From Oikopleura dioica (Eukaryota > Animalia > Chordata): a DNA stretch of 64,000 nt. The first letter of the stretch is position 1; every line of letters starts with the position of its first letter. The stretch spans positions 12,958,001 to 13,022,000 of the forward strand of contig OU015568.1 of assembly GCA_907165135.1 (NCBI GenBank), in the 5' to 3' direction. This document shows, one piece after another, positions 20,869 to 28,900 of the stretch. A program made the position numbers and the translations under genes. The notes below the pieces were generated by a model. That model ran no database searches and was not told the DNA's origin. It was given only the letters and a program-made list of their open reading frames with translations.

Positions 20869-21569
20869 ATGGCTTCGTATCCATCCGTCGTCGATAGGTA
20901 TTATCAACGATACACTTGGAATACAGAAAAGAAGTTTTCGGTAACACCCCAAGCTTTTCCCATTTCGACTCGATTCTAGGGACATTCAGGGCCAGCTAGA
21001 GTTCTTCGTCACTCAAATCGAATTCTTGTGAGTTGTCTTCATCCCGAACATCCCGTCCGCAAGCAAACAATTAAAAAGATCACCTTTCAAATTTCTGAAA
21101 AGTGCGATCGAGGGAATAACAAAGTTTCTGGAAAAAGAAAGAAGGGTGGACAGGTATTCTTTAAAATTTCAATTTGAAAATTGACCATTACTATTCTAGT
21201 GGCTAAACGAGAACGCCCCTATCTTGCGAATCGAGACAGAAGAGAGTGAAGATCCGATTTTGATTCAGAGTGGCTGCAGAGGAACTTTAGTCGAAGTCAA
21301 TTCTCAAATTATAGGAAAGGTCAAGAGCACGTCATTCTGAATGACTCATTCATCATATTTTTCTGGAAAGCTTTTATCCTAATAAAGATAATCCGAAACT
21401 TCTTTTGAACGAGTCGGAAGGCAAAGGTTACATCGCCGTTGTTTTGCCACGTGGGGAGGAACTTGGAGCAGCGTTCGGGGAGGAGTACACATTAGACAAA
21501 GACCGCGTCGAAGCTGAGAAACTATCTGACGAGGATGCAGGAGCTTGCCCGATCGCTAGCGCATGCTAG
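20869..21569 (+). CDS. ABITRAM: Actin-binding transcription modulator (FAM206A/Simiate)
   Basis: PSVVDRYY, HSNRILV, NKVSGKRKKGGQWL, GCRGTLVEVN, EGKGYIAVVLP. Confidence 0.85.
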
Positions 21570-22609
21570 AGGCGAGCTCAAACGGCTACGGGCTGATATG
21601 ACGAAGTTCAAGGCCCAAGAGCGACATCGAATGAAAGTAGTAGAAGACATCGTCAATAGCAAACAAATTTCTATCGCCCAAGTTGAACAAATCAAATCTG
21701 GCAATTTCGAACCGCTGGCTAAGAAGAGTAAAATTCTTCCTCCCGAAACCGACGTTGACAGAAAGTTGAAGCTCTCTCAGACGATTGCGTCTCCCATCGG
21801 TCATGTTTTATCCTCTTTTCTGACAAAATCTGGCACTCCTCATCAACCGGGGCAGCTGGAAACATCTTCTATAATCAAACTATCGCAGGGATCAACGGGA
21901 AAATCAATCAAACAGCGTTGGATGCCCAAGGACGCTCTAGAAGGATTGGAGGACTATTCCCATTGTTGGATTATCTTTCACTTCCATCTCAATGATCCCG
22001 AATCGAATGGAAAAAAGTCGAAAGTGGCTCCACCACGAGGAGGAGGGACGAAAGTGGGAATTTTTGCATCTCGCGCTCCATATCGACCTAGTCCAATTGG
22101 CCTCTCTCTCGTTGAAATAGACAGAATTGACCATGATAAAGGAGAATTGGTGGTCAAAAACTGCGATCTTGTTCATGAAACTCCAGTCCTAGATATCAAG
22201 CCATACATACCTGACTACGACAAGCCTGGCGAAGACAAGGATGTAAAAGTGGCGAAGTGGCTAGAAGAGAAGAATGCGAAAGAATCTGAAATCGCAGGAA
22301 TAGGATTTACGGGAAGAGCTGACCAACAAATGCAGGAGCTGTTTTCGGTTTCAGAATACGACTCTGCTGAAGCACTAAAAAGTGCTCTTACGGTAAATCT
22401 CAGAATTTGAAAGAACTCTCTAGATAAAAATTTTAGAAAATGCTAATGAACGACCCGCGTTCAATCTACCGAAAGACACAGCTTGAGAAAGGCGAGAAAA
22501 ATCGCCTATTCTTTTGAACTTTTCGAATTTGACTGTTACTGTTTGGTTTGACGGCGATTACGCTGAAGTTCTCAAAGTCGAGCCATATTATGAGCATAAG
22601 AACGATTGA
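21535..22609 (+). CDS. TRMO: tRNA m6t6A37 methyltransferase (TsaA/YaeB family)
   Basis: GTPHQP, LEGLEDYSHCWIIFHFH, KVAPPR..GIFASRAPYRPSPIGLSLV, TPVLDIKPYIP; N-terminal coiled coil. Confidence 0.92.
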
Positions 22610-22677
22610 GAGAGAAAGAGCTAGAAATAGGCTATTTATTTTCTCTGATCGAATTGCGTTCAGATGAAACTTAGAGA

Positions 22678-24334
22678 ATGACGTATCACGAAGAAGACTC
22701 GAGATCGAGTGGAGGCTCCGGTGGAGGTAATTGAAAGTGAAACCGGCATCTTACAAACTCTATTTAGCGCCTGGAAAATGCCTAATTATTGGAGACTCCA
22801 TGCTTCAAAAAGTGAATCCTGATGGTTGGGAGCACGGAGCTTACTACTTTGCATATGCCGGGATCAAAGTCAAACAGTTGATGCAGCAAATAAAAGTATA
22901 AACGAAACTGGTTTTGATAGTTTGTTACTTTTTTGTAGACCGAAGTCCTGCCGCCACCTACAGATATCAGTGTAGTATTTCTACATGTTGGAACAAATAA
23001 TGTTTCGACAAGAGCAGATTTGAAAGAGCGAGAAGATGTTTTGGAGCCGCCAGAAATTGCCGAGGATATCATGAATGTAGTTGATACTCTTCGCAAACAC
23101 TATGAATACGCGCACATTATAGTCAGGTTCGACGCCGTGTCCTTAGATAAAATCCCTATGATGCGTTTAGTGCAATATTACCAAGACTTGATCCATGGAA
23201 ACTTGGCGATCTCGAGCGCGTGAGCAGCATCAACAGCGACTTGAAAAGATCTGTTCACGATACTTACCTGAAAAACATCAAATTTGTCGACTTCTCAGAT
23301 CAATTTCTTTCCAACTGGAAGATCCGAAAAGAGTGCTATCGTTTCTTTTATGAAAGGCAGTTAGATGAGCCCGACTTATGTCATCTTTCTGATGAAGGAA
23401 ATGTCCGATTCAATGGTAAATTGAACTATTTCCTTCTTTCCTTCATTATTTCTCAGAATGCTTAAAAACATGTCTCGCGGGTGCGATGCATGAAGCGCGC
23501 TCACAGTGGCCCAGAGATGCAAAACTACTGGGTAAAAGAGAATGGGACGAATTCCGCCGCCGTACATTCAGAAGCCGAGATAATCCACGCTTCAAATATA
23601 CGAACTACGAGCCTAGTCAAAAATCATATGATCGGTTTATCAAGTCGAATCCTCGAGCAGCGGAAACCAACGGAGATCCCAATCCTAAGAAAAGCGGAGG
23701 AGGATTTAACATTTCTGAACTACTGGTAAATTTGATTCTCAAGTGAGTTTATTCAAGCTATATATTTTAGCTATTGAAAGCTAAGGGTCGAAAAGATGCG
23801 GAAGAGCGGGCGCAGGCCGCTGGCCAAGGAGGCCGTGATGAGAGACGACAGAACTCCCACGATGGTGATCAGCGAAATCCTTCAAGGAATCGTGACCGTA
23901 GTCGAAGTCCTCGTCGTAGCCCAAAGCGTAGAAGGGATTCGCGAGAGCGCGACTCACGAAGCTCTCGACGTCGCTCCCCTAGCTTTGATCGAGATGGTCA
24001 ATTCGATCGACGGCCAGATTCGCGTAGCCGAGATCGTTCATCGGACGTAGATTATAGAGCTAGGAGGCCTGACTGGTCAGATAGTGGGAGTCAAGGAAGA
24101 GAACGTGACTCTCGAAGTAGATATGACTCGTACACTGATACGGATTTTCGAAAACCTTCTCAGCGGGGAGATCGGCGAGGACATGATTCACGCGATCGAA
24201 GAGATGACCGGGATGATCGCCGGGAATCCTCGCGGGACAGACGTCGAGACTCTTACGACTCCTACGGTCGAGGCCGCTCGCCACAATCTCGAGATTTCCG
24301 AGAGCCGGATTGGAGCGAAAGAAGACGTCGCTAG
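22678..24334 (+). CDS. SGNH/GDSL hydrolase domain fused to a long Arg/Ser/Asp (RS/RD) low-complexity tail
   Basis: Six exons joined by five GT-AG introns: LIIGDSML (block I), YAGIKV (II), LHVGTNN (III), IIVSAILPR, DLCHL (V), then ~190 aa RS/RD region. Confidence 0.8.
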
Positions 24335-24516
24335 CCCTACTGTTCATCACAAAATGTTAGAATTCAATAATAGAACCTCCTCCTTTTGGTCATTTCGTAC
24401 CCCTGTTGAGTCGGTGCGAAATGGAGTTTTTGAAACTGCCAGCCCGATTAGAATTAGATCGACCCATCTCAAATGTTCTATTAACAACTCCTTCTAATTA
24501 TTAAATAACTTTTAGA

Positions 24517-24935
24517 ATGAACTTCGAAATTCGACGGCTACCGCTTTTCTGGATGAGAGGAAACGAAGTGGAACCCTCGTTTCAAATTGGAATCTTAAAA
24601 ATTAATACACTGGTTCCATGGAGACGATCTCTATCCGAATCTTTTATGAATTCATTCTAAAAGTTATCCCTTTCGCTCCTCTCGCCGGCTCTCCTGTCTT
24701 AAAGCTCCAAGAAATGCTTTTGACCCCTCGAAAAGACGAACGAAAGATCGAGCGCGAACTACAAACCAACTATCCTCATGCAATAATCGAAACGATAGAT
24801 CTCCACCGTGGCGATGCCTACGAAACTGTCGCCGAGTTCCCGAGCTTTGGCGTCTCAGCCATTGCTCGAAGTGCTGCCCAGTCGAAGCTTAATTTGAAAC
24901 AAAAACTAGAAAAAATATTTACTCCCGAAAACTGA
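24517..24935 (+). CDS. Small unknown alpha/beta protein (dsRBD- or BolA-like by eye); start could be 24618
   Basis: Open frame KIERELQTNYPHAIIETIDL..AYETVAEF..AAQSKLNLKQKLEKI; ATG after TTTAGA. Confidence 0.3.
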
Positions 24936-25133
24936 TTAAAATCCTTCATCCTGCCGCTCGTTTATTAGAAATAAACTTTATCATTCAAAGTGAATACGAA
25001 ATGTTTTGAATCTAATGTTACTTCCGAAAATCATTCGAAATAATTCTTCGAAAATTTATTGAAAAAAAAATATGATGAGGAACAGAACTGTGTGACGATT
25101 TTTGTGATAATTCATTTTTCAAGGTCTTTCATC

Positions 25134-25564
25134 TCATTTCAAGTCAGCTTGAATCGCCTGTCTTAGTTCTTCGTCGGTAATCGCATCAGTTGCAAGTTCG
25201 TCAGTAAATGTGGCCTCTTGGTTGATAAAAATATTGATGGGTCTTGTATTTCCTGATAGAACTCTGATTATATACCACCATCGTCGCCAGTGATCAGCTT
25301 GCGTGTCAAGGTAGAAAATCGCAAAGGTAGCATCAACTTCTCGTAATCGTTCAATCGATCGCCTTATTTCTGGTAATGGTGCATTTTCTCATAAAAATTT
25401 TACCTGGCAAGTGGACAAAAGGAGAAACCAACCACTGAAAGTTGATATCTTTGCAAAACTGCAGCTCTGAAGTTATTGACATCCGCTTGCCCATCGATCT
25501 CCACAAGAAACTCAGCTGCTCGAGAAAACGAAAAAGAAAGTAAAAGCAATTTCAAAAACTTCAT
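25134..25564 (-). CDS. Glutaredoxin-like protein with signal peptide, monothiol CPLA motif
   Basis: MKFLKLLLLSFSFSRA signal; SVVGFSFCPLARRSIERL..FAIFYLD..LSGNTRPINIFIN follows the Grx pattern; one GT-AG intron. Confidence 0.55.
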
Positions 25565-25903
25565 TTTCAATTATTTTGCCGAAAAATATTCTTTTCGATC
25601 TTATTTATAATTTCGCTGGTCAATCAGGTGGAAAATTTTGCCCAACAGCAACGACGATAGAAAATTCTAGGGCCTTCTAACGGCTAAAATAACAGTGCCC
25701 GGAAATTCCGGGCAGGGATGCAATAAACTTCAAAAATAGCAGGATTTTGAGGTGATCAATTTCTTTGAAGTTCAAAGTCTGAACACTGAACCTTTCAAAG
25801 CTCCATGAAAGATATTCCTATAAACATCAAAATAACGTTCATTTGATTGTATTGTATAAAATAAATATTTATTAAAATAAAAATGAATATAGAAAATTTA
25901 GTC

Positions 25904-28900
25904 TTAGCCGAGGATACATCGAGTGACTTTCTCGGTGATCAAATCTCCAAGAGTCGTACTCCAAAGAATCTGGGTGATGAAGGTTAGTCCAATTGCATGC
26001 GTCAGGAAGAGCTCTTTTTCGTTTTTGAAAAGATATGTGTTGAGGATTGATGTTCCGACGATCAAAACTTAAAAGAAATTTCAGCGGGGAGATGGTTGAA
26101 AATAACTTACCGAGAACGAAGAATATAACTTCCGCAACTGGCGCAAGCAGTTTCCTCATCTTTGTGATTCTCTTTCTCCAGTGTCGTTGTTGCGCTCCCT
26201 GACTTGGCTCTAGTGCCGGATCTACGACCTTTCTTCTGCGTTTTTTCTTGACTACTACTTGAGTTGTTGCGGGCTCGACGGGCTCTTCTGGTGCTGGAGC
26301 AGCGGCTTGTTCAGCTGGAGGCTCAACTCGTCGTCGTCTTTTCTTGACAACAGTTGTCCGCTCAGGAGCAGTCTCAGTGGGTTCTACCGGAGCCGAAGAA
26401 GCAACTTGTTCTGCTGGTGCAGCACCTTGATCTGCTGGAGTATCGGTCCGGCGTCTTCTTTTGACAACAGTTGTTTCCTCTTGACCTCCTTGTTTGGTCG
26501 ATGGTTGAGATGGAGCTGTTTCTACTGGAGACTCGATTGCCGGCCCATTTTCTTCGCCAGTTTTCTTTCTTCGTCTTCTTTTCTGCTCAGCTGGAACTGG
26601 TACTGGCGCTGCTTCCTTTTCTACTTGAGAATCGCGCTGTGCAGCCAAGTTGGCTGCCAACTTTGATAATGTTAGGATATTTTTTAAGAAATGGGCATTA
26701 CCTGTCGAGAGGCTTGTTCGGTCATCCTCCTGCTCAATCTTGGCTCAAGGCCGGGAATCGCAGTTGATGGCACTGAAAGCATCGATGGATTGTTTCTGTA
26801 AGCCTCCGAGATTAGGTCCGAAGTCTCTTGAAAATCTGTCAAGTTGTCGACTTTTTTCTCATCAACGCCGTCGAACATCTCAGGGTGAAAAATCGGATTG
26901 ACAACTGTGACGGATTCTCCAGTTGGATCATGTCTTCTTGGGTCAGAACCAGGAATATCTTCAGGGCGAATGAGCCACTCGTTTTCTTTTAGGATAACTG
27001 ATGGTTCCCATATTCGGCTATTTAGGTTGGGATTCGTTGTATAGCCGTCTTGAATCGGCAATTCTAAGAATCGTATATTTTCAATGACAAAATTCGAAAC
27101 TTACCTTCGACAAAACTTTCCTCGGCCTCCTCCTCGCTTTCATTTTCAGCTTCAGGATTAGAAGCTCTTCTCAATTTTGAAGCACTTCTAGCACTGTCGT
27201 TTCTTTTACTTTCGAAGTCTTCCATGGGTTCCGACTTCACAGTTTTGACCATCATTCCTCTGATCGATTCTCGGACGTTTATCGCTAAACAACTTTCAAT
27301 ATAAAGGCTACAATTGTCTATCTTACAAGATGGGACGACGGACATTTCCTTTGAGCTTGCACGAGCTGTAAGTCTTGAGAAGTTGCTGACATCGGAGTCG
27401 ATCGAATTTGATTTTCGTGGCGCTTTTGCTAAAATTATATATTTAAATCATGACGCTCTCAATTTTATTAGACAACTTACATTCTCTGCCAACTTGTGTG
27501 GTTATTTCGATATCCTCGAGCATCAGTGAAAATTTTCTTTGGTCCATTGCAAAGAATTCAGTTGCATTATTTTTTCGTTCGCCAGCTTCATCGATTTTCG
27601 TTGTTATTTTGTAACCCAATTTTGCTCTACAAATAAGTTATTTTTTCAATAAAATATTTGATACTCGTACTTGGTCCCTTTCATAAATACTGCTCGTTGA
27701 AGTTCTCCTCGAATGAAGCCTCTCTTGTGAATCATTCTTGAGAAAATAAGTGCACTCGCTTGGGGGCAGGGTTCAGTTTGCCCCAGTAGGCAATAAATCC
27801 AAGTATTTTCTCCATTTTCTGTGATTTTCAGTTGCCGATTACTTTGAATTACAGGTACGTGGCTGATTGATTCAGTCTCGTATTCCATAAGAATGTGAAG
27901 GATCCTTGGATAATTTTACAATGATAATAACGGTATGAAGCTTACTTGAAGACGATCCCCGCGGGAATGCTGGTGAAAATAGAAGCCATGAACATTCGGT
28001 TGAACCAGAGCAATCCATTGTTATTGGCATCGGTCATCGCGCGGATCCTCTCAACCTGGTCGTCAGAATCCAAGTCGGCCTCGGAGAGCAAGGAAGAATA
28101 AACCAAAACTGCGGCCATCATAGAGATAAGAATCTCTTCTATCTTCGGGAAAATCGTAGTGAGGGCAAGATACGATGATTTACTTTGCTTCTTTGACAAG
28201 TTGATTATTGAGGGTTGAAGAGCTTAATTAATTTTATTTTGATAAAATTTGTCGATGAGTTACCGAAGAGCGAGCGGCTTCCTTTCCATGTTCCAATTTT
28301 GGTGCCGTCGTTGAAGATCTGCATTGAGGAAATGAAGCCGTAATAATCTTCTTTTGAGTCTCGCGAGTAAAGACAAATGCTAACATTTTCGACGTTGTTG
28401 GCAAAATCTTCATCGATAGACAAAGTCAAAGCATTATTCTTGGCCATTTTTTTATTCGCGTCTCGGTAGATGATTGCTTTCTTTTCCCCGTTATCGCCTT
28501 CAAATAGAAGATACAGATCGAATATTGTGTTTTCGCTCATTTGGTTGATTGAAAACTTCATCTGGATGCCAGAAAGCCCATAGAACTCTCCAGTAGAAAG
28601 GTCATCGACTTGTCGTTCTGTTTGAATTTTAACTTTGTCCAAGAGATGACCAAAGATGAGCCAGAAAACGGCCAAGAGACCCAGAAAACCGATAAAACAT
28701 CTAAAGAATCTATAGAATGTTCTTAACCCTGTCTCGAGCGCTTAAAATTTGCCTATCTCGAGCGCGAGCGCATCTTCATGCGCTCGTGGTCTAGAAGATT
28801 TTTTGCAAAATGCCAAATAGAGGCAATTTCTCTCGAAATGGCTAATTTTCTGGGTTTAGCTACGTCTCCGAGACCTAGAAAACACCAACATGCGCGTCTG

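What the first reader, a model, noticed from the sequence alone, without database searches (positions are those of the whole stretch)
22678..24334. Catalytic-looking SGNH esterase domain fused to an SR-protein-like RS/RD tail, embedded in a housekeeping operon
Seen: spliced product has GDS Ser, block II Gly, GTNN Asn and DLCH Asp/His, followed by ~190 aa of RS/RD/RE dipeptides. Established: SGNH folds occur in PAF-acetylhydrolase Ib alpha subunits, in ORF1p of some L2/CR1 LINEs and in the RNA-binding OSK domain of Oskar; RS domains target splicing speckles. I do not recognise this combination. Inference: a de-acylase recruited to RNP/spliceosomal condensates, or a domesticated LINE ORF1 esterase (YAGIKVKQL resembles the ORF1p-type block II). 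This is notable in a genome that uses non-canonical splice sites.
Basis: partly seen in the sequence, partly recalled or inferred. Interest (0 to 1): 0.8.

Follow-up and report, generated by a model that had tools for sequence, protein, structure and literature searches.

The report
Transposon-type esterase gene with alternative tails
A small Oikopleura dioica gene encodes an apparently active esterase of the kind otherwise carried by jumping genes (LINE ORF1 proteins); its mRNA either reads on into an arginine/serine/aspartate-rich, splicing-factor-like tail or cuts that tail out through an unusual non-GT/AG junction to reach a different, conserved C-terminus.

Summary
A six-exon gene (22678-24334, five GT-AG introns of 41-45 nt) encodes an SGNH domain with all catalytic residues, followed in frame by a 187-aa R/S/D-rich tail. 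cDNA contigs from a sister O. dioica lineage, one starting with the spliced leader, carry esterase and tail in one ORF. The tail is under purifying selection (dN/dS 0.16, in-frame indels only).

Three points are new:
- **Second isoform.** A 955-nt segment (23781-24735) holding the tail, its stop codon and a highly conserved non-coding block is removed through a junction that is non-GT/AG in every placement. This joins the gene to a conserved 66-aa C-terminal exon (24736-24935), which had looked like a separate downstream gene. cDNAs show this form in two O. dioica lineages and a third species.
- **Transposon-type esterase.** The closest solved structure by sequence is the zebrafish L2 ORF1p esterase (4c1b, E 3.7e-11, ahead of PAF-AH Ib). 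Both transposon-specific signature residues are present. Outside the family, hits are PHD/zinc-knuckle/coiled-coil ORF1p-like proteins.
- **Restricted family.** All assignable members are appendicularian. An O. dioica paralogue has a longer R/S/K tail.

The operon context is supported for the upstream TrmO gene only. The function is inferred, not shown.

The parts
22659..22663 (+). Predicted SL trans-splice acceptor (ttcag) ahead of the gene
   Evidence: In the sister-lineage cDNA L014 the spliced leader is joined at the homologous position, directly before ATGAAA...ATGACG. In the window this is by homology only.
22664..22681 (+). 5-codon upstream ORF (MKLRE*) whose stop overlaps the main ATG (ATGA)
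   Evidence: Read. Short uORFs right after the SL are also present in L014, L001, L007 and L011.
22678..22726 (+). Exon 1 (start codon; MTYHEEDSRSSGGSGG)
   Evidence: The exon 1/2 junction is conserved in cDNA L006.
22768..22895 (+). Exon 2: SGNH block I (GDS, Ser 22797-22799) and block II Gly (22860-22862)
   Evidence: Both residues are invariant in alignments A2 and A3.
22939..23126 (+). Exon 3: block III (H-V-G-T-N-N; Asn 22996-22998; transposon-type His 22984-22986)
   Evidence: Weak Pfam Lipase_GDSL_2 hit on this exon alone. The His at N-4 is the ZfL2-1 H191 position (PMC3905857; alignment).
23171..23415 (+). Exon 4: Ser of the split codon 23125-26/23171 (S228-like), A-I-L-P-R, and block V D-x-x-H (Asp 23373-23375, His 23382-23384)
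   Evidence: Intron 4 (23416-23456) is skipped in X1 contig record 2.
23457..23725 (+). Exon 5: basic linker with the family motif EW..FRRRTFRSRDNPRFKYTNY
   Evidence: The motif columns E224 W225 R229 T232 R236 R240 F241 K242 T244 N245 Y246 are invariant across five family members.
23771..23780 (+). 10 nt (CTATTGAAAG) common to both isoforms, after canonical intron 5 (23726-23770)
   Evidence: X1 record 3 has exon 5 + CTATTG + 24732 onward. L012 shows the same in the sister lineage.
23781..24334 (+). R/S/D-rich tail ORF (isoform A) ending in TAG 24332-24334
   Evidence: Versus L006: dN/dS 0.16, 77% aa identity, 11 in-frame indels. cDNAs L006, L013 and L014.
23781..24735 (+). 955-nt segment removed in isoform B. 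AAAG is repeated at both ends, so the cut can be placed five ways (CT..AG, GC..AA, AG..AA, AA..AA, AA..GA), none of them GT/GC/GA-AG
   Evidence: Homologous junctions appear in L012 (P0015) and L001 (P0003).
24307..24528 (+). Conserved non-coding block inside the removed segment. It is 90-97% identical between lineages, against 77% in the tail ORF and about 50% in intron 5
   Evidence: No Rfam match. Fold z-score -0.2.
24505..24521 (+). Arm 1 of a 17-nt perfect inverted repeat. It covers the acceptor-like TTTTAG and lies just 3' of an ATTAAA
   Evidence: I2. It pairs in the minimum-energy folds of both window and L008. One A-T to G-C double change is seen between lineages.
24651..24667 (+). 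Arm 2 of the inverted repeat, about 70 nt upstream of the 3' junction
   Evidence: It is a conserved island in an otherwise poorly conserved stretch.
24736..24935 (+). Terminal coding exon of isoform B (DERKIERE...KIFTPEN, stop TGA 24933-24935). It was earlier taken for a separate gene
   Evidence: 86% aa identity to P0015 and dN/dS 0.08. Homologous C-terminus in P0003 and P0026.
24970..24975 (+). AATAAA, likely poly(A) signal
   Evidence: L001 carries a poly(A) tail about 60 nt after the homologous stop.
21535..22517 (+). Upstream TrmO-like gene, co-transcribed with this gene
   Evidence: Pfam TrmO_N E 9e-34. Its last intron 22392-22435 is skipped in X1. The polycistronic cDNA L013 runs from the TrmO last exon through this gene. 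The same neighbour is present in L002 and L008.

Best explanation
This is a host gene of Oikopleura dioica, the downstream partner of a TrmO gene in an SL-trans-spliced operon. Its N-terminal 200 aa form a catalytically competent SGNH esterase of the retrotransposon ORF1p type, most likely co-opted from a LINE in the appendicularian lineage. Behind the esterase comes a basic motif conserved across the family (EW..R..T...RFK.TNY).

The C-terminus is chosen at the RNA level:
- **Isoform A.** If a 955-nt segment stays in, translation runs into a 187-aa R/S/D-rich, disordered, SR-protein-like tail.
- **Isoform B.** If the segment is removed through a non-GT/AG junction, the reading frame continues into a conserved 66-aa C-terminal exon.

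Shown: the gene structure, both mRNA forms, purifying selection on both C-termini, the SGNH fold, intact catalytic residues, and sequence affinity to ORF1p esterases.

Inferred:
- The enzyme is active, probably on short acyl or acetyl esters as for ZfL2-1 and PAF-AH Ib.
- The tail directs isoform A to nuclear or RNP compartments.
- The weak non-canonical junction and the conserved long-range stem set the isoform ratio.
For: **Gene model and frames:**

**RNA evidence:**
- X1 contigs confirm intron 4 and give the isoform B junction.
- 58 sister-lineage reads join exon 5 to exon 6.
- L014 is SL-started isoform A, L006 is isoform A at 100% identity to the Genoscope scaffold, and L013 is polycistronic with TrmO and retains the segment.
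- L012 is isoform B. L001 is an SL-to-poly(A) isoform-B-type mRNA of a third species.

**Selection:** dN/dS is 0.04-0.06 for exons 2-5, 0.16 for the tail and 0.08 for the terminal exon.

**Fold and family:**
- Pfam Lipase_GDSL_2 scores below its cut-off on orthologues.
- The AF2 core has pLDDT 70-88, and Foldseek top hits are PAF-AH Ib and GDSL esterases.
- Profile against PDB: 4c1b ORF1p esterase 3.7e-11, PAF-AH Ib 1.3e-6.
- The H(N-4) and Ser signature follows PMC3905857.

**Outgroup hits:** PHD+esterase (P0013), PHD-like+esterase+CCHC (P0068), coiled coil+esterase (P0065), and a protein named Ty3 Gag-Pol (P0080).

**Host-gene status:** conserved introns, an SL, the same TrmO neighbour in three lineages, and no ORF of 300 aa or more within 14-32 kb.

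**Paralogue with an R/S/K tail:** P0010 / CBY09137.1.
Against: - No assay, localisation or binding data exist, so activity and RNP targeting are inferences.
- Pfam scores stay below the gathering cut-off.
- The direction of transfer (transposon to host) rests on distribution only. The tree is unrooted and contains no PAF-AH.
- The isoform B junction is flanked by a 4-nt direct repeat, the classic signature of reverse-transcriptase template switching. In the window's own lineage it rests on one low-depth contig.
- The tail is missing from orthologues of two other species, so it is not essential to the family's core function.
- A group of about 280-aa homologues of unknown provenance (possibly viral) is the closest sister group and could be the true donor or recipient.
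- The window's own spliced protein was never searched or folded as one piece. Orthologues of 63-92% identity per exon stood in for it.
Confidence: 0.7

Rival explanations
1. The R/S/D tail is translational noise from an inefficiently removed intron. The only functional product is isoform B (esterase plus the conserved C-terminal exon), and the intron-retaining mRNAs are unproductive.
For: - Orthologues in two other species (P0003, P0026) have no such tail.
- Isoform A shares the downstream sequence as a long 3' UTR in L013.
- The junction is weak and non-canonical, so retention is expected.
Against: - A 187-codon open frame survives about 23% nucleotide divergence with 11 indels, all in frame.
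- dN/dS is 0.16 with dS about 0.9, so constraint acts on the protein and not on the RNA.
- Eight of nine cluster members of the sister lineage are isoform A, and at least one of their cDNAs (L014) is SL-capped.
- An O. dioica paralogue has a constitutive R/S/K tail.
Confidence: 0.12
2. The isoform B junction is not biological in O. dioica. It would be a reverse-transcription template switch at the AAAG repeat, and the 24736-24935 exon would be a separate small downstream cistron.
For: - A 4-nt direct repeat lies at both ends and no placement gives GT-AG.
- In the window lineage there is one contig at depth 4.7.
- Template switching is discussed as a source of apparent non-canonical sites in PMC7072748.
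Against: - The same junction appears in independent studies and lineages (X1, L012), and the same protein join appears in a full-length SL-to-poly(A) mRNA of a third species (L001).
- The exon is conserved as coding only from the junction onward, in the frame continuous with exon 5 (dN/dS 0.08). The ORF stretch upstream of it is not conserved.
- In P0026 the homologous C-terminal domain is again fused to the esterase.
Confidence: 0.08
3. The esterase is a fast-evolving orthologue of the cellular PAF-acetylhydrolase Ib catalytic subunit (PAFAH1B2/3), not a transposon derivative.
For: - Foldseek ranks PAF-AH Ib structures first.
- Profile hits to PAF-AH Ib reach E 1e-6.
- One ESM-atlas neighbour cluster carries a PAF-AH-type name.
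Against: - 4c1b scores 15 bits higher than any PAF-AH. Its low Foldseek TM-score is expected, because that crystal is a domain-swapped dimer (PMC3905857).
- The family has His at N-4 and Ser after strand 4, where PAF-AH has Trp and Leu.
- No PAF-AH-named protein is among the best 120 word-search hits, whereas ORF1p-like architectures are.
Confidence: 0.1

Closest known systems
Esterase domain of CR1/L2-type LINE ORF1p (ZfL2-1 ORF1p, PDB 4c1b; Schneider et al. 2013, PMC3905857)
   Same: - SGNH fold with Ser/Gly/Asn/Asp-His all present.
- The two positions conserved only in transposon esterases are present: His four residues before the block III Asn, and Ser after strand 4.
- Similar block I and II wording (IIGDSM..., F.YpGi.akqL).
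- It is the best PDB match (45.8 bits, E 3.7e-11).
   Different: - It is a host gene with five conserved introns, an SL, an operon partner and syntenic orthologues.
- The esterase is N-terminal rather than C-terminal.
- There is no preceding coiled coil or PHD finger and no ORF2.
- It is followed by a family-specific basic motif and alternative C-termini.
PAF-acetylhydrolase Ib catalytic subunits (PAFAH1B2/3; PDB 1wab, 1fxw, 1vyh)
   Same: - Same fold and catalytic residues.
- GTNN block III and a ...LPR strand.
- Best structural matches to the AF2 model (TM by target about 0.62).
   Different: - Lower sequence score (30.9 bits).
- Trp and Leu at the transposon-signature positions.
- PAF-AH Ib has no RS-like tail and no RFK.TNY motif.
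SR and SR-related proteins, and arginine-rich mixed-charge domains (for example the U1-70K tail)
   Same: The tail has 30% Arg, runs such as RSRSPRRSP and SRSSRRRSPS, and RD/RE dipeptides. In the best 50-aa window, 42% of residues lie in RS/SR dipeptides.
   Different: - No RRM or other RNA-binding domain.
- The dipeptide counts are explained by composition alone.
- The tail is optional, being present in an alternative isoform only.
- Speckle targeting is untested.
Exitrons and retained coding introns that switch C-termini
   Same: An internal protein-coding stretch is either kept and translated or removed, changing the C-terminus. Both outcomes are conserved.
   Different: - The junction is non-GT/AG in every placement and is not one of the GA/GC/GG-AG classes common in O. 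dioica (PMC7072748).
- The removed piece contains a stop codon and a conserved non-coding block with a long-range stem.
Oskar OSK domain, and the dead esterase domain reported by this scan in O. dioica EDC4 (s1-378121, unchecked)
   Same: SGNH-type domains recruited into RNP-associated proteins.
   Different: Those domains have lost the catalytic residues. Here all of them are kept across orthologues and paralogues.

Membership tests
SGNH/GDSL hydrolase superfamily | Block I Ser (GDS), block II Gly, block III Asn (GxN), block V Asp-x-x-His | tested here: met
   All are present in the window and invariant in A2 and A3 across orthologues and the paralogue.
SGNH/GDSL hydrolase superfamily | Three-layer alpha/beta/alpha flavodoxin-like fold | tested here: met
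   AF2 model of orthologue P0003: the core has pLDDT 70-88 and 140 PDB matches at E<=0.001, all SGNH enzymes among the 50 shown apart from designed scaffolds. The window protein itself was not folded, because no joined reference exists.
SGNH/GDSL hydrolase superfamily | Pfam Lipase_GDSL_2 above the gathering score (32.9 bits) | tested here: not met
   24.5-27.6 bits on orthologues and the paralogue, and 13.7 bits on exon 3 alone. These are significant E-values (about 1e-5) but below the curated cut-off.
SGNH/GDSL hydrolase superfamily | Hydrolytic activity | not testable with these tools
   This needs a recombinant enzyme assay.
Retrotransposon ORF1p-type esterase clade (Schneider 2013) | His at N-4 of block III (ZfL2-1 H191) and Ser after strand 4 (S228) | tested here: met
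   The window has H-V-G-T-N-N and I-I-V-S-A-I-L-P-R. Both align to 4c1b H and S. The His is invariant in A3. The Ser is kept in the orthologues but shifted in paralogue P0009/10.
Retrotransposon ORF1p-type esterase clade (Schneider 2013) | Closer in sequence to ORF1p esterases than to cellular SGNH enzymes | tested here: met
   4c1b scores 45.8 bits against 30.9 for PAF-AH Ib. Non-family hits have ORF1p architectures. A rooted phylogeny was not possible.
Retrotransposon ORF1p-type esterase clade (Schneider 2013) | Part of a LINE: N-terminal coiled coil or PHD, and ORF2 with endonuclease/RT downstream | tested here: not met
   The esterase starts at residue 17 or so. No ORF of 300 aa or more lies within 14-32 kb. 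The gene has introns, an SL and a conserved TrmO neighbour. It is therefore a derivative, not an element.
SR / RS-domain proteins | RS domain rich in consecutive Arg-Ser dipeptides | tested here: inconclusive
   19% of tail residues lie in RS/SR dipeptides, and 42% in the best 50-aa window. This is no more than composition predicts.
SR / RS-domain proteins | One or two N-terminal RRMs | tested here: not met
   No RRM was found by Pfam on exons or orthologues.
PAF-AH Ib alpha subunits | Orthology to PAFAH1B2/3 (best reciprocal similarity, LIS1-binding dimer) | tested here: inconclusive
   It is the second-best PDB family. Signature positions differ. Reciprocal searches and a rooted tree were not possible with the sequences on hand.

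The most novel reading that the evidence does not exclude
The 955-nt tail-encoding segment is a conserved regulated switch. A junction with no canonical dinucleotides is controlled by a conserved long-range RNA stem that masks an internal poly(A)/acceptor-like site. Cutting there toggles a catalytically active, transposon-derived esterase between an SR-like, RNP- or nucleus-targeted form and a form with a different folded C-terminus. In other words, a domesticated LINE ORF1p enzyme would act on RNP-associated acyl or acetyl substrates. The same genome may have recruited this esterase type more than once into RNA-processing proteins (EDC4 note, unchecked).
Probability: 0.2. Interest if true: 0.85.

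Novelty: new variant of a known kind. Interest (0 to 1): 0.62.

Why it matters
Esterase-type ORF1 proteins are widespread in animal LINEs, yet their function is unknown. The only structural study proposed lipid or membrane binding.

A host gene would give a tractable, non-mobile handle on what this enzyme class does. This one keeps the esterase catalytically intact for long evolutionary times, in a compact and genetically accessible chordate. It would also be, to my knowledge, the first domesticated esterase-type ORF1p.

Pairing the esterase with an SR-like tail in two paralogues points to a nuclear or RNP setting that can be tested.

Separately, the gene offers a clean natural example of a conserved non-GT/AG excision that chooses between two selected C-termini, with a conserved RNA stem beside it. 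That is useful for the open question of how larvacean spliceosomes handle non-canonical sites.

It also corrects public annotation. The NCBI model of the orthologue has a mis-framed tail and misses the terminal exon.

Tried and rejected
- **Exon-by-exon Pfam and PDB searches** of the window were nearly blank. The only strong hits, designed beta-propeller repeats, were repeat artefacts. Single exons are too short.
Database cDNA proteins served as proxies instead: P0003, P0007 and P0015, found with exon 4 in the large HMMER search and by cluster look-up.
- **Window paralogues:** tblastn of the exons against the window found none.
- **Conserved non-coding block:** Rfam at E<=1 over 22400-25100 found nothing. 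Its thermodynamic fold is no better than shuffles (z -0.2). RNAalifold gave almost no covariation because the block hardly varies.
- **Unconventional cleavage:** I looked by eye for IRE1-type motifs at the junction. The consensus loop motif is absent.
- **Transposon insertion:** I considered whether the 955-nt segment is a transposon, as with the hAT cases noted in this window. No terminal inverted repeats lie at its ends, and it is conserved between lineages, so I rejected this.
- **Downstream small ORFs** 24517-24660 and 24618-24731 are not conserved as protein between lineages and were rejected as genes.
- **The ~280-aa homologue group:** IMG/VR scans found nothing. Pfam and PHROGs on their neighbours found nothing. 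Their origin stays open.
- **Reads:** Read laying on the species-labelled raw-read runs gave only patchy coverage, because those animals differ by more than 10% from the window.
Full report
**Organism and rules followed.** I checked this indirectly: related cDNA contigs begin with the O. dioica spliced leader, and the closest named proteins are O. dioica entries.

Window exons were searched one by one by reference. For whole-protein work I used database proteins from cDNA contigs of close relatives (P0003, P0007, P0015 and others).

**1. The observation.** Reading in the frames, with the phase bookkeeping, gives six + strand exons:
- 22678-22726
- 22768-22895
- 22939-23126
- 23171-23415
- 23457-23725
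- 23771-24334

They are separated by five GT..AG introns of 41-45 nt and total 480 codons. Exons 2-4 carry GDS, the block II Gly, GTNN and D-x-x-H.

Exon 6 encodes 187 aa with 30% Arg, 17% Asp and 16% Ser. There are 21 RS/SR and 22 RD/DR dipeptides, which is what that composition gives on shuffling. The best 50-aa window has 42% of its residues in RS/SR dipeptides and 68% in RS/RD/RE dipeptides. The described product is therefore really encoded, and the tail is SR-like by composition.

**2. RNA evidence for the fusion.**
- A metatranscriptome (X1) that is 99% identical to the window skips intron 4 and the last intron of the upstream gene.
- The species-labelled raw-read runs come from a lineage more than 10% divergent. 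Even so, 58 reads anchored at 23775 carry the diverged end of exon 5 directly in front.
- The large HMMER search with exon 4 found only three representatives among 1.84 billion. Through them, a word search and a cluster look-up, I obtained cDNA contigs of the Genoscope-type lineage.
- L006 is 100% identical to scaffold FN653823.1 with all five small introns removed, and it has an uninterrupted 461-aa ORF running through the tail.
- L014 is the same form and starts with the full spliced leader.

The tail is under purifying selection. Window against L006 gives 77% aa identity, 11 indels all in frame, and dN/dS 0.16 at dS about 0.9. Exons 2-5 give 0.04-0.06.

**3. A second isoform and the true 3' end of the gene.** X1 record 3 joins 23725 to CTATTG and then to 24732 onward. 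I first took this for a chimera.
- P0003 is a 356-aa protein from a 1227-nt contig that starts with the SL and ends in poly(A). It has exactly this join...NISELL-LLK-DDRKIERE..., followed by a homologue of window 24732-24932.
- P0015 (contig L012) shows the same in the Genoscope-type lineage, skipping 1014 nt of L008.
- The terminal exon is 86% identical at the protein level between lineages, with dN/dS 0.08.
- The ORF stretches upstream of it (24517-24731) are not conserved. The supposed downstream gene is therefore this gene's last exon.

Because AAAG stands at both ends, the removed 955 nt can be placed five ways: CT..AG, GC..AA, AG..AA, AA..AA and AA..GA. In the sister lineage the first of these becomes CC..AG. 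None is GT-AG, and none is the GA/GC/GG-AG type frequent in O. dioica.

With the cut after AAAG, the donor reads AG|CTAAGG. That matches the 5' splice-site consensus at positions -2, -1 and +2 to +5. A weak spliceosomal site is my preferred reading, but it is not shown.

The direct repeat raises the spectre of template switching. The recurrence of the join in three taxa and several studies argues against it, as does the frame-specific conservation of the exon.

L013 is a 2343-nt cDNA that runs from the last exon of TrmO through the whole gene with the small introns removed and the 955 nt retained, to the common 3' end. Two things follow. Isoform A can be a retention form that shares the terminal 3' end. 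And TrmO and this gene are co-transcribed.

**4. What the esterase is.**
- Pfam Lipase_GDSL_2 matches orthologues and the paralogue at E about 1e-5, below the gathering score.
- An AF2 model of P0003 has a confident SGNH core, and Foldseek finds PAF-AH Ib and bacterial GDSL esterases.
- By sequence, P0003 alone already hits the ZfL2-1 ORF1p esterase 4c1b first.
- A five-sequence family profile scores 4c1b at 45.8 bits (E 3.7e-11), against 30.9 bits for PAF-AH Ib.

Schneider et al. (PMC3905857) define two positions conserved only in transposon esterases: His four residues before the block III Asn, and a Ser after strand 4. The window has H-V-G-T-N-N and I-I-V-S-A-I-L-P-R, and both align to the 4c1b residues. 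PAF-AH has Trp and Leu there.

In profile word searches, the only hits outside the family are proteins with ORF1p-like architecture:
- PHD plus esterase (P0013).
- PHD-like plus esterase plus CCHC knuckles (P0068).
- Coiled coil plus esterase (P0065).
- A coral protein named Ty3 Gag-Pol (P0080).

Nearly all of those from which I could cut the domain carry HVGTN[DN].

The gene itself is not an element. It has conserved introns, an SL and the same TrmO neighbour in three lineages, and there is no large ORF nearby. A domesticated ORF1p-type esterase is the best reading. The direction of transfer is inferred from distribution only.

**5. The family.** Members whose cDNAs carry the appendicularian SL:
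- The orthologues P0003, and P0008/P0026 from a further species. In the latter, a coiled coil replaces part of the linker and the same C-terminal domain follows.
- P0039-41.
- An O. dioica paralogue, P0009-11 (CBY09137.1). It has the esterase, the same basic motif and a tail of about 300 aa that is proline-rich first and then R/S/K-rich.

The motif EW..R..T...RFK.TNY behind the esterase is invariant in all of them and matches nothing in Pfam.

An SR-like tail is thus found in two O. dioica paralogues but not family-wide. In the P0008/P0026 species, the junction that removes a retained AT-rich piece is also non-GT/AG: GA..TA or AC..AG.

**6. Mechanism proposed.** Three things are shown: two mRNA forms, two selected C-termini, and an intact catalytic set.

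Three things are inferred:
- The esterase hydrolyses small acyl esters, by analogy with ZfL2-1 and PAF-AH Ib.
- The R/S/D tail is a disordered, probably phosphorylatable module for nuclear or RNP targeting.
- The ratio of forms is set by a weak non-canonical junction.

Inside the removed segment, the 220 nt after the tail's stop codon are 90-97% identical between lineages that differ by about 50% in the small intron 5. A 17-nt perfect inverted repeat (24505-24521 / 24651-24667) closes a 129-nt loop. Its first arm covers a TTTTAG acceptor-like site and sits just 3' of an ATTAAA. The repeat is kept in L008 with one A-T to G-C double change. I propose that it masks that internal site or shapes the 3' junction. 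This is untested, and Rfam and fold statistics give no support.

The important additions are the second isoform with a non-canonical junction, the corrected gene end, the appendicularian family with a tailed paralogue, and a sister group of unknown, possibly viral, provenance.

Noticed in passing
window 24307-24528 and 24642-24679: A non-coding block just after the tail's stop codon is 90-97% identical between O. dioica lineages that are otherwise about 25% divergent. It contains a 17-nt perfect inverted repeat (24505-24521 / 24651-24667) with one compensatory change in the sister lineage, and a second 10-nt pairing (24312-24321 / 24670-24679). There is no Rfam match.
   Followed up: partly
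window 22664-22681; L014, L001, L007, L011 5' ends: A very short upstream ORF starts at or just after the SL trans-splice site in every family mRNA seen. In the window and L014, its stop overlaps the main start codon as ATGA.
   Followed up: no
L015 6001-6861 (TARA scaffold), L016, L017; proteins P0046-P0063: About 18 clusters of ~280-aa homologues (esterase plus the EW...TNF motif, 25-28% identity, no His at N-4) are encoded as intron-less ORFs with TATA-like and AATAAA signals. The marine metagenome contigs are packed with same-strand ORFs that match nothing in Pfam or PHROGs. None was found in IMG/VR. They may come from an unknown virus or another compact genome, and they form the sister group of the appendicularian proteins in the tree.
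   Followed up: partly
L007 about 797-1066 against P0026: In another appendicularian species, the cDNA L007 retains an AT-rich piece that is removed in P0026. That junction is also non-GT/AG (GA..TA or AC..AG, with a 1-nt ambiguity).
   Followed up: partly
L008 940-2839 (FN653823.1), protein P0006: The public NCBI model of the orthologue (486 aa) reads most of the tail in the wrong frame and misses the terminal exon. cDNAs L006 and L012 give the correct products.
   Followed up: yes
P0034 (CBY09137.1) against P0010: The public 697-aa model of the O. dioica paralogue contains an internal duplicated stretch that is absent from eight 586-aa cDNA-derived proteins. This is likely an assembly or annotation artefact, or an allelic duplication.
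   Followed up: no
window 21273-24976 against L008 and L002: The window differs by about 27% at the nucleotide level from the Genoscope assembly across this locus, with synonymous sites near saturation. The window therefore comes from another of the cryptic O. dioica lineages. Gene order TrmO then esterase is kept, but the BAF gene that follows in L008 (4040-4703) has no counterpart in window 21000-27000, the stretch compared.
   Followed up: partly
window 21535-22517: The upstream gene is a TrmO (tRNA m6t6A methyltransferase) homologue. Its last intron, 22392-22435, is confirmed by RNA.
   Followed up: yes
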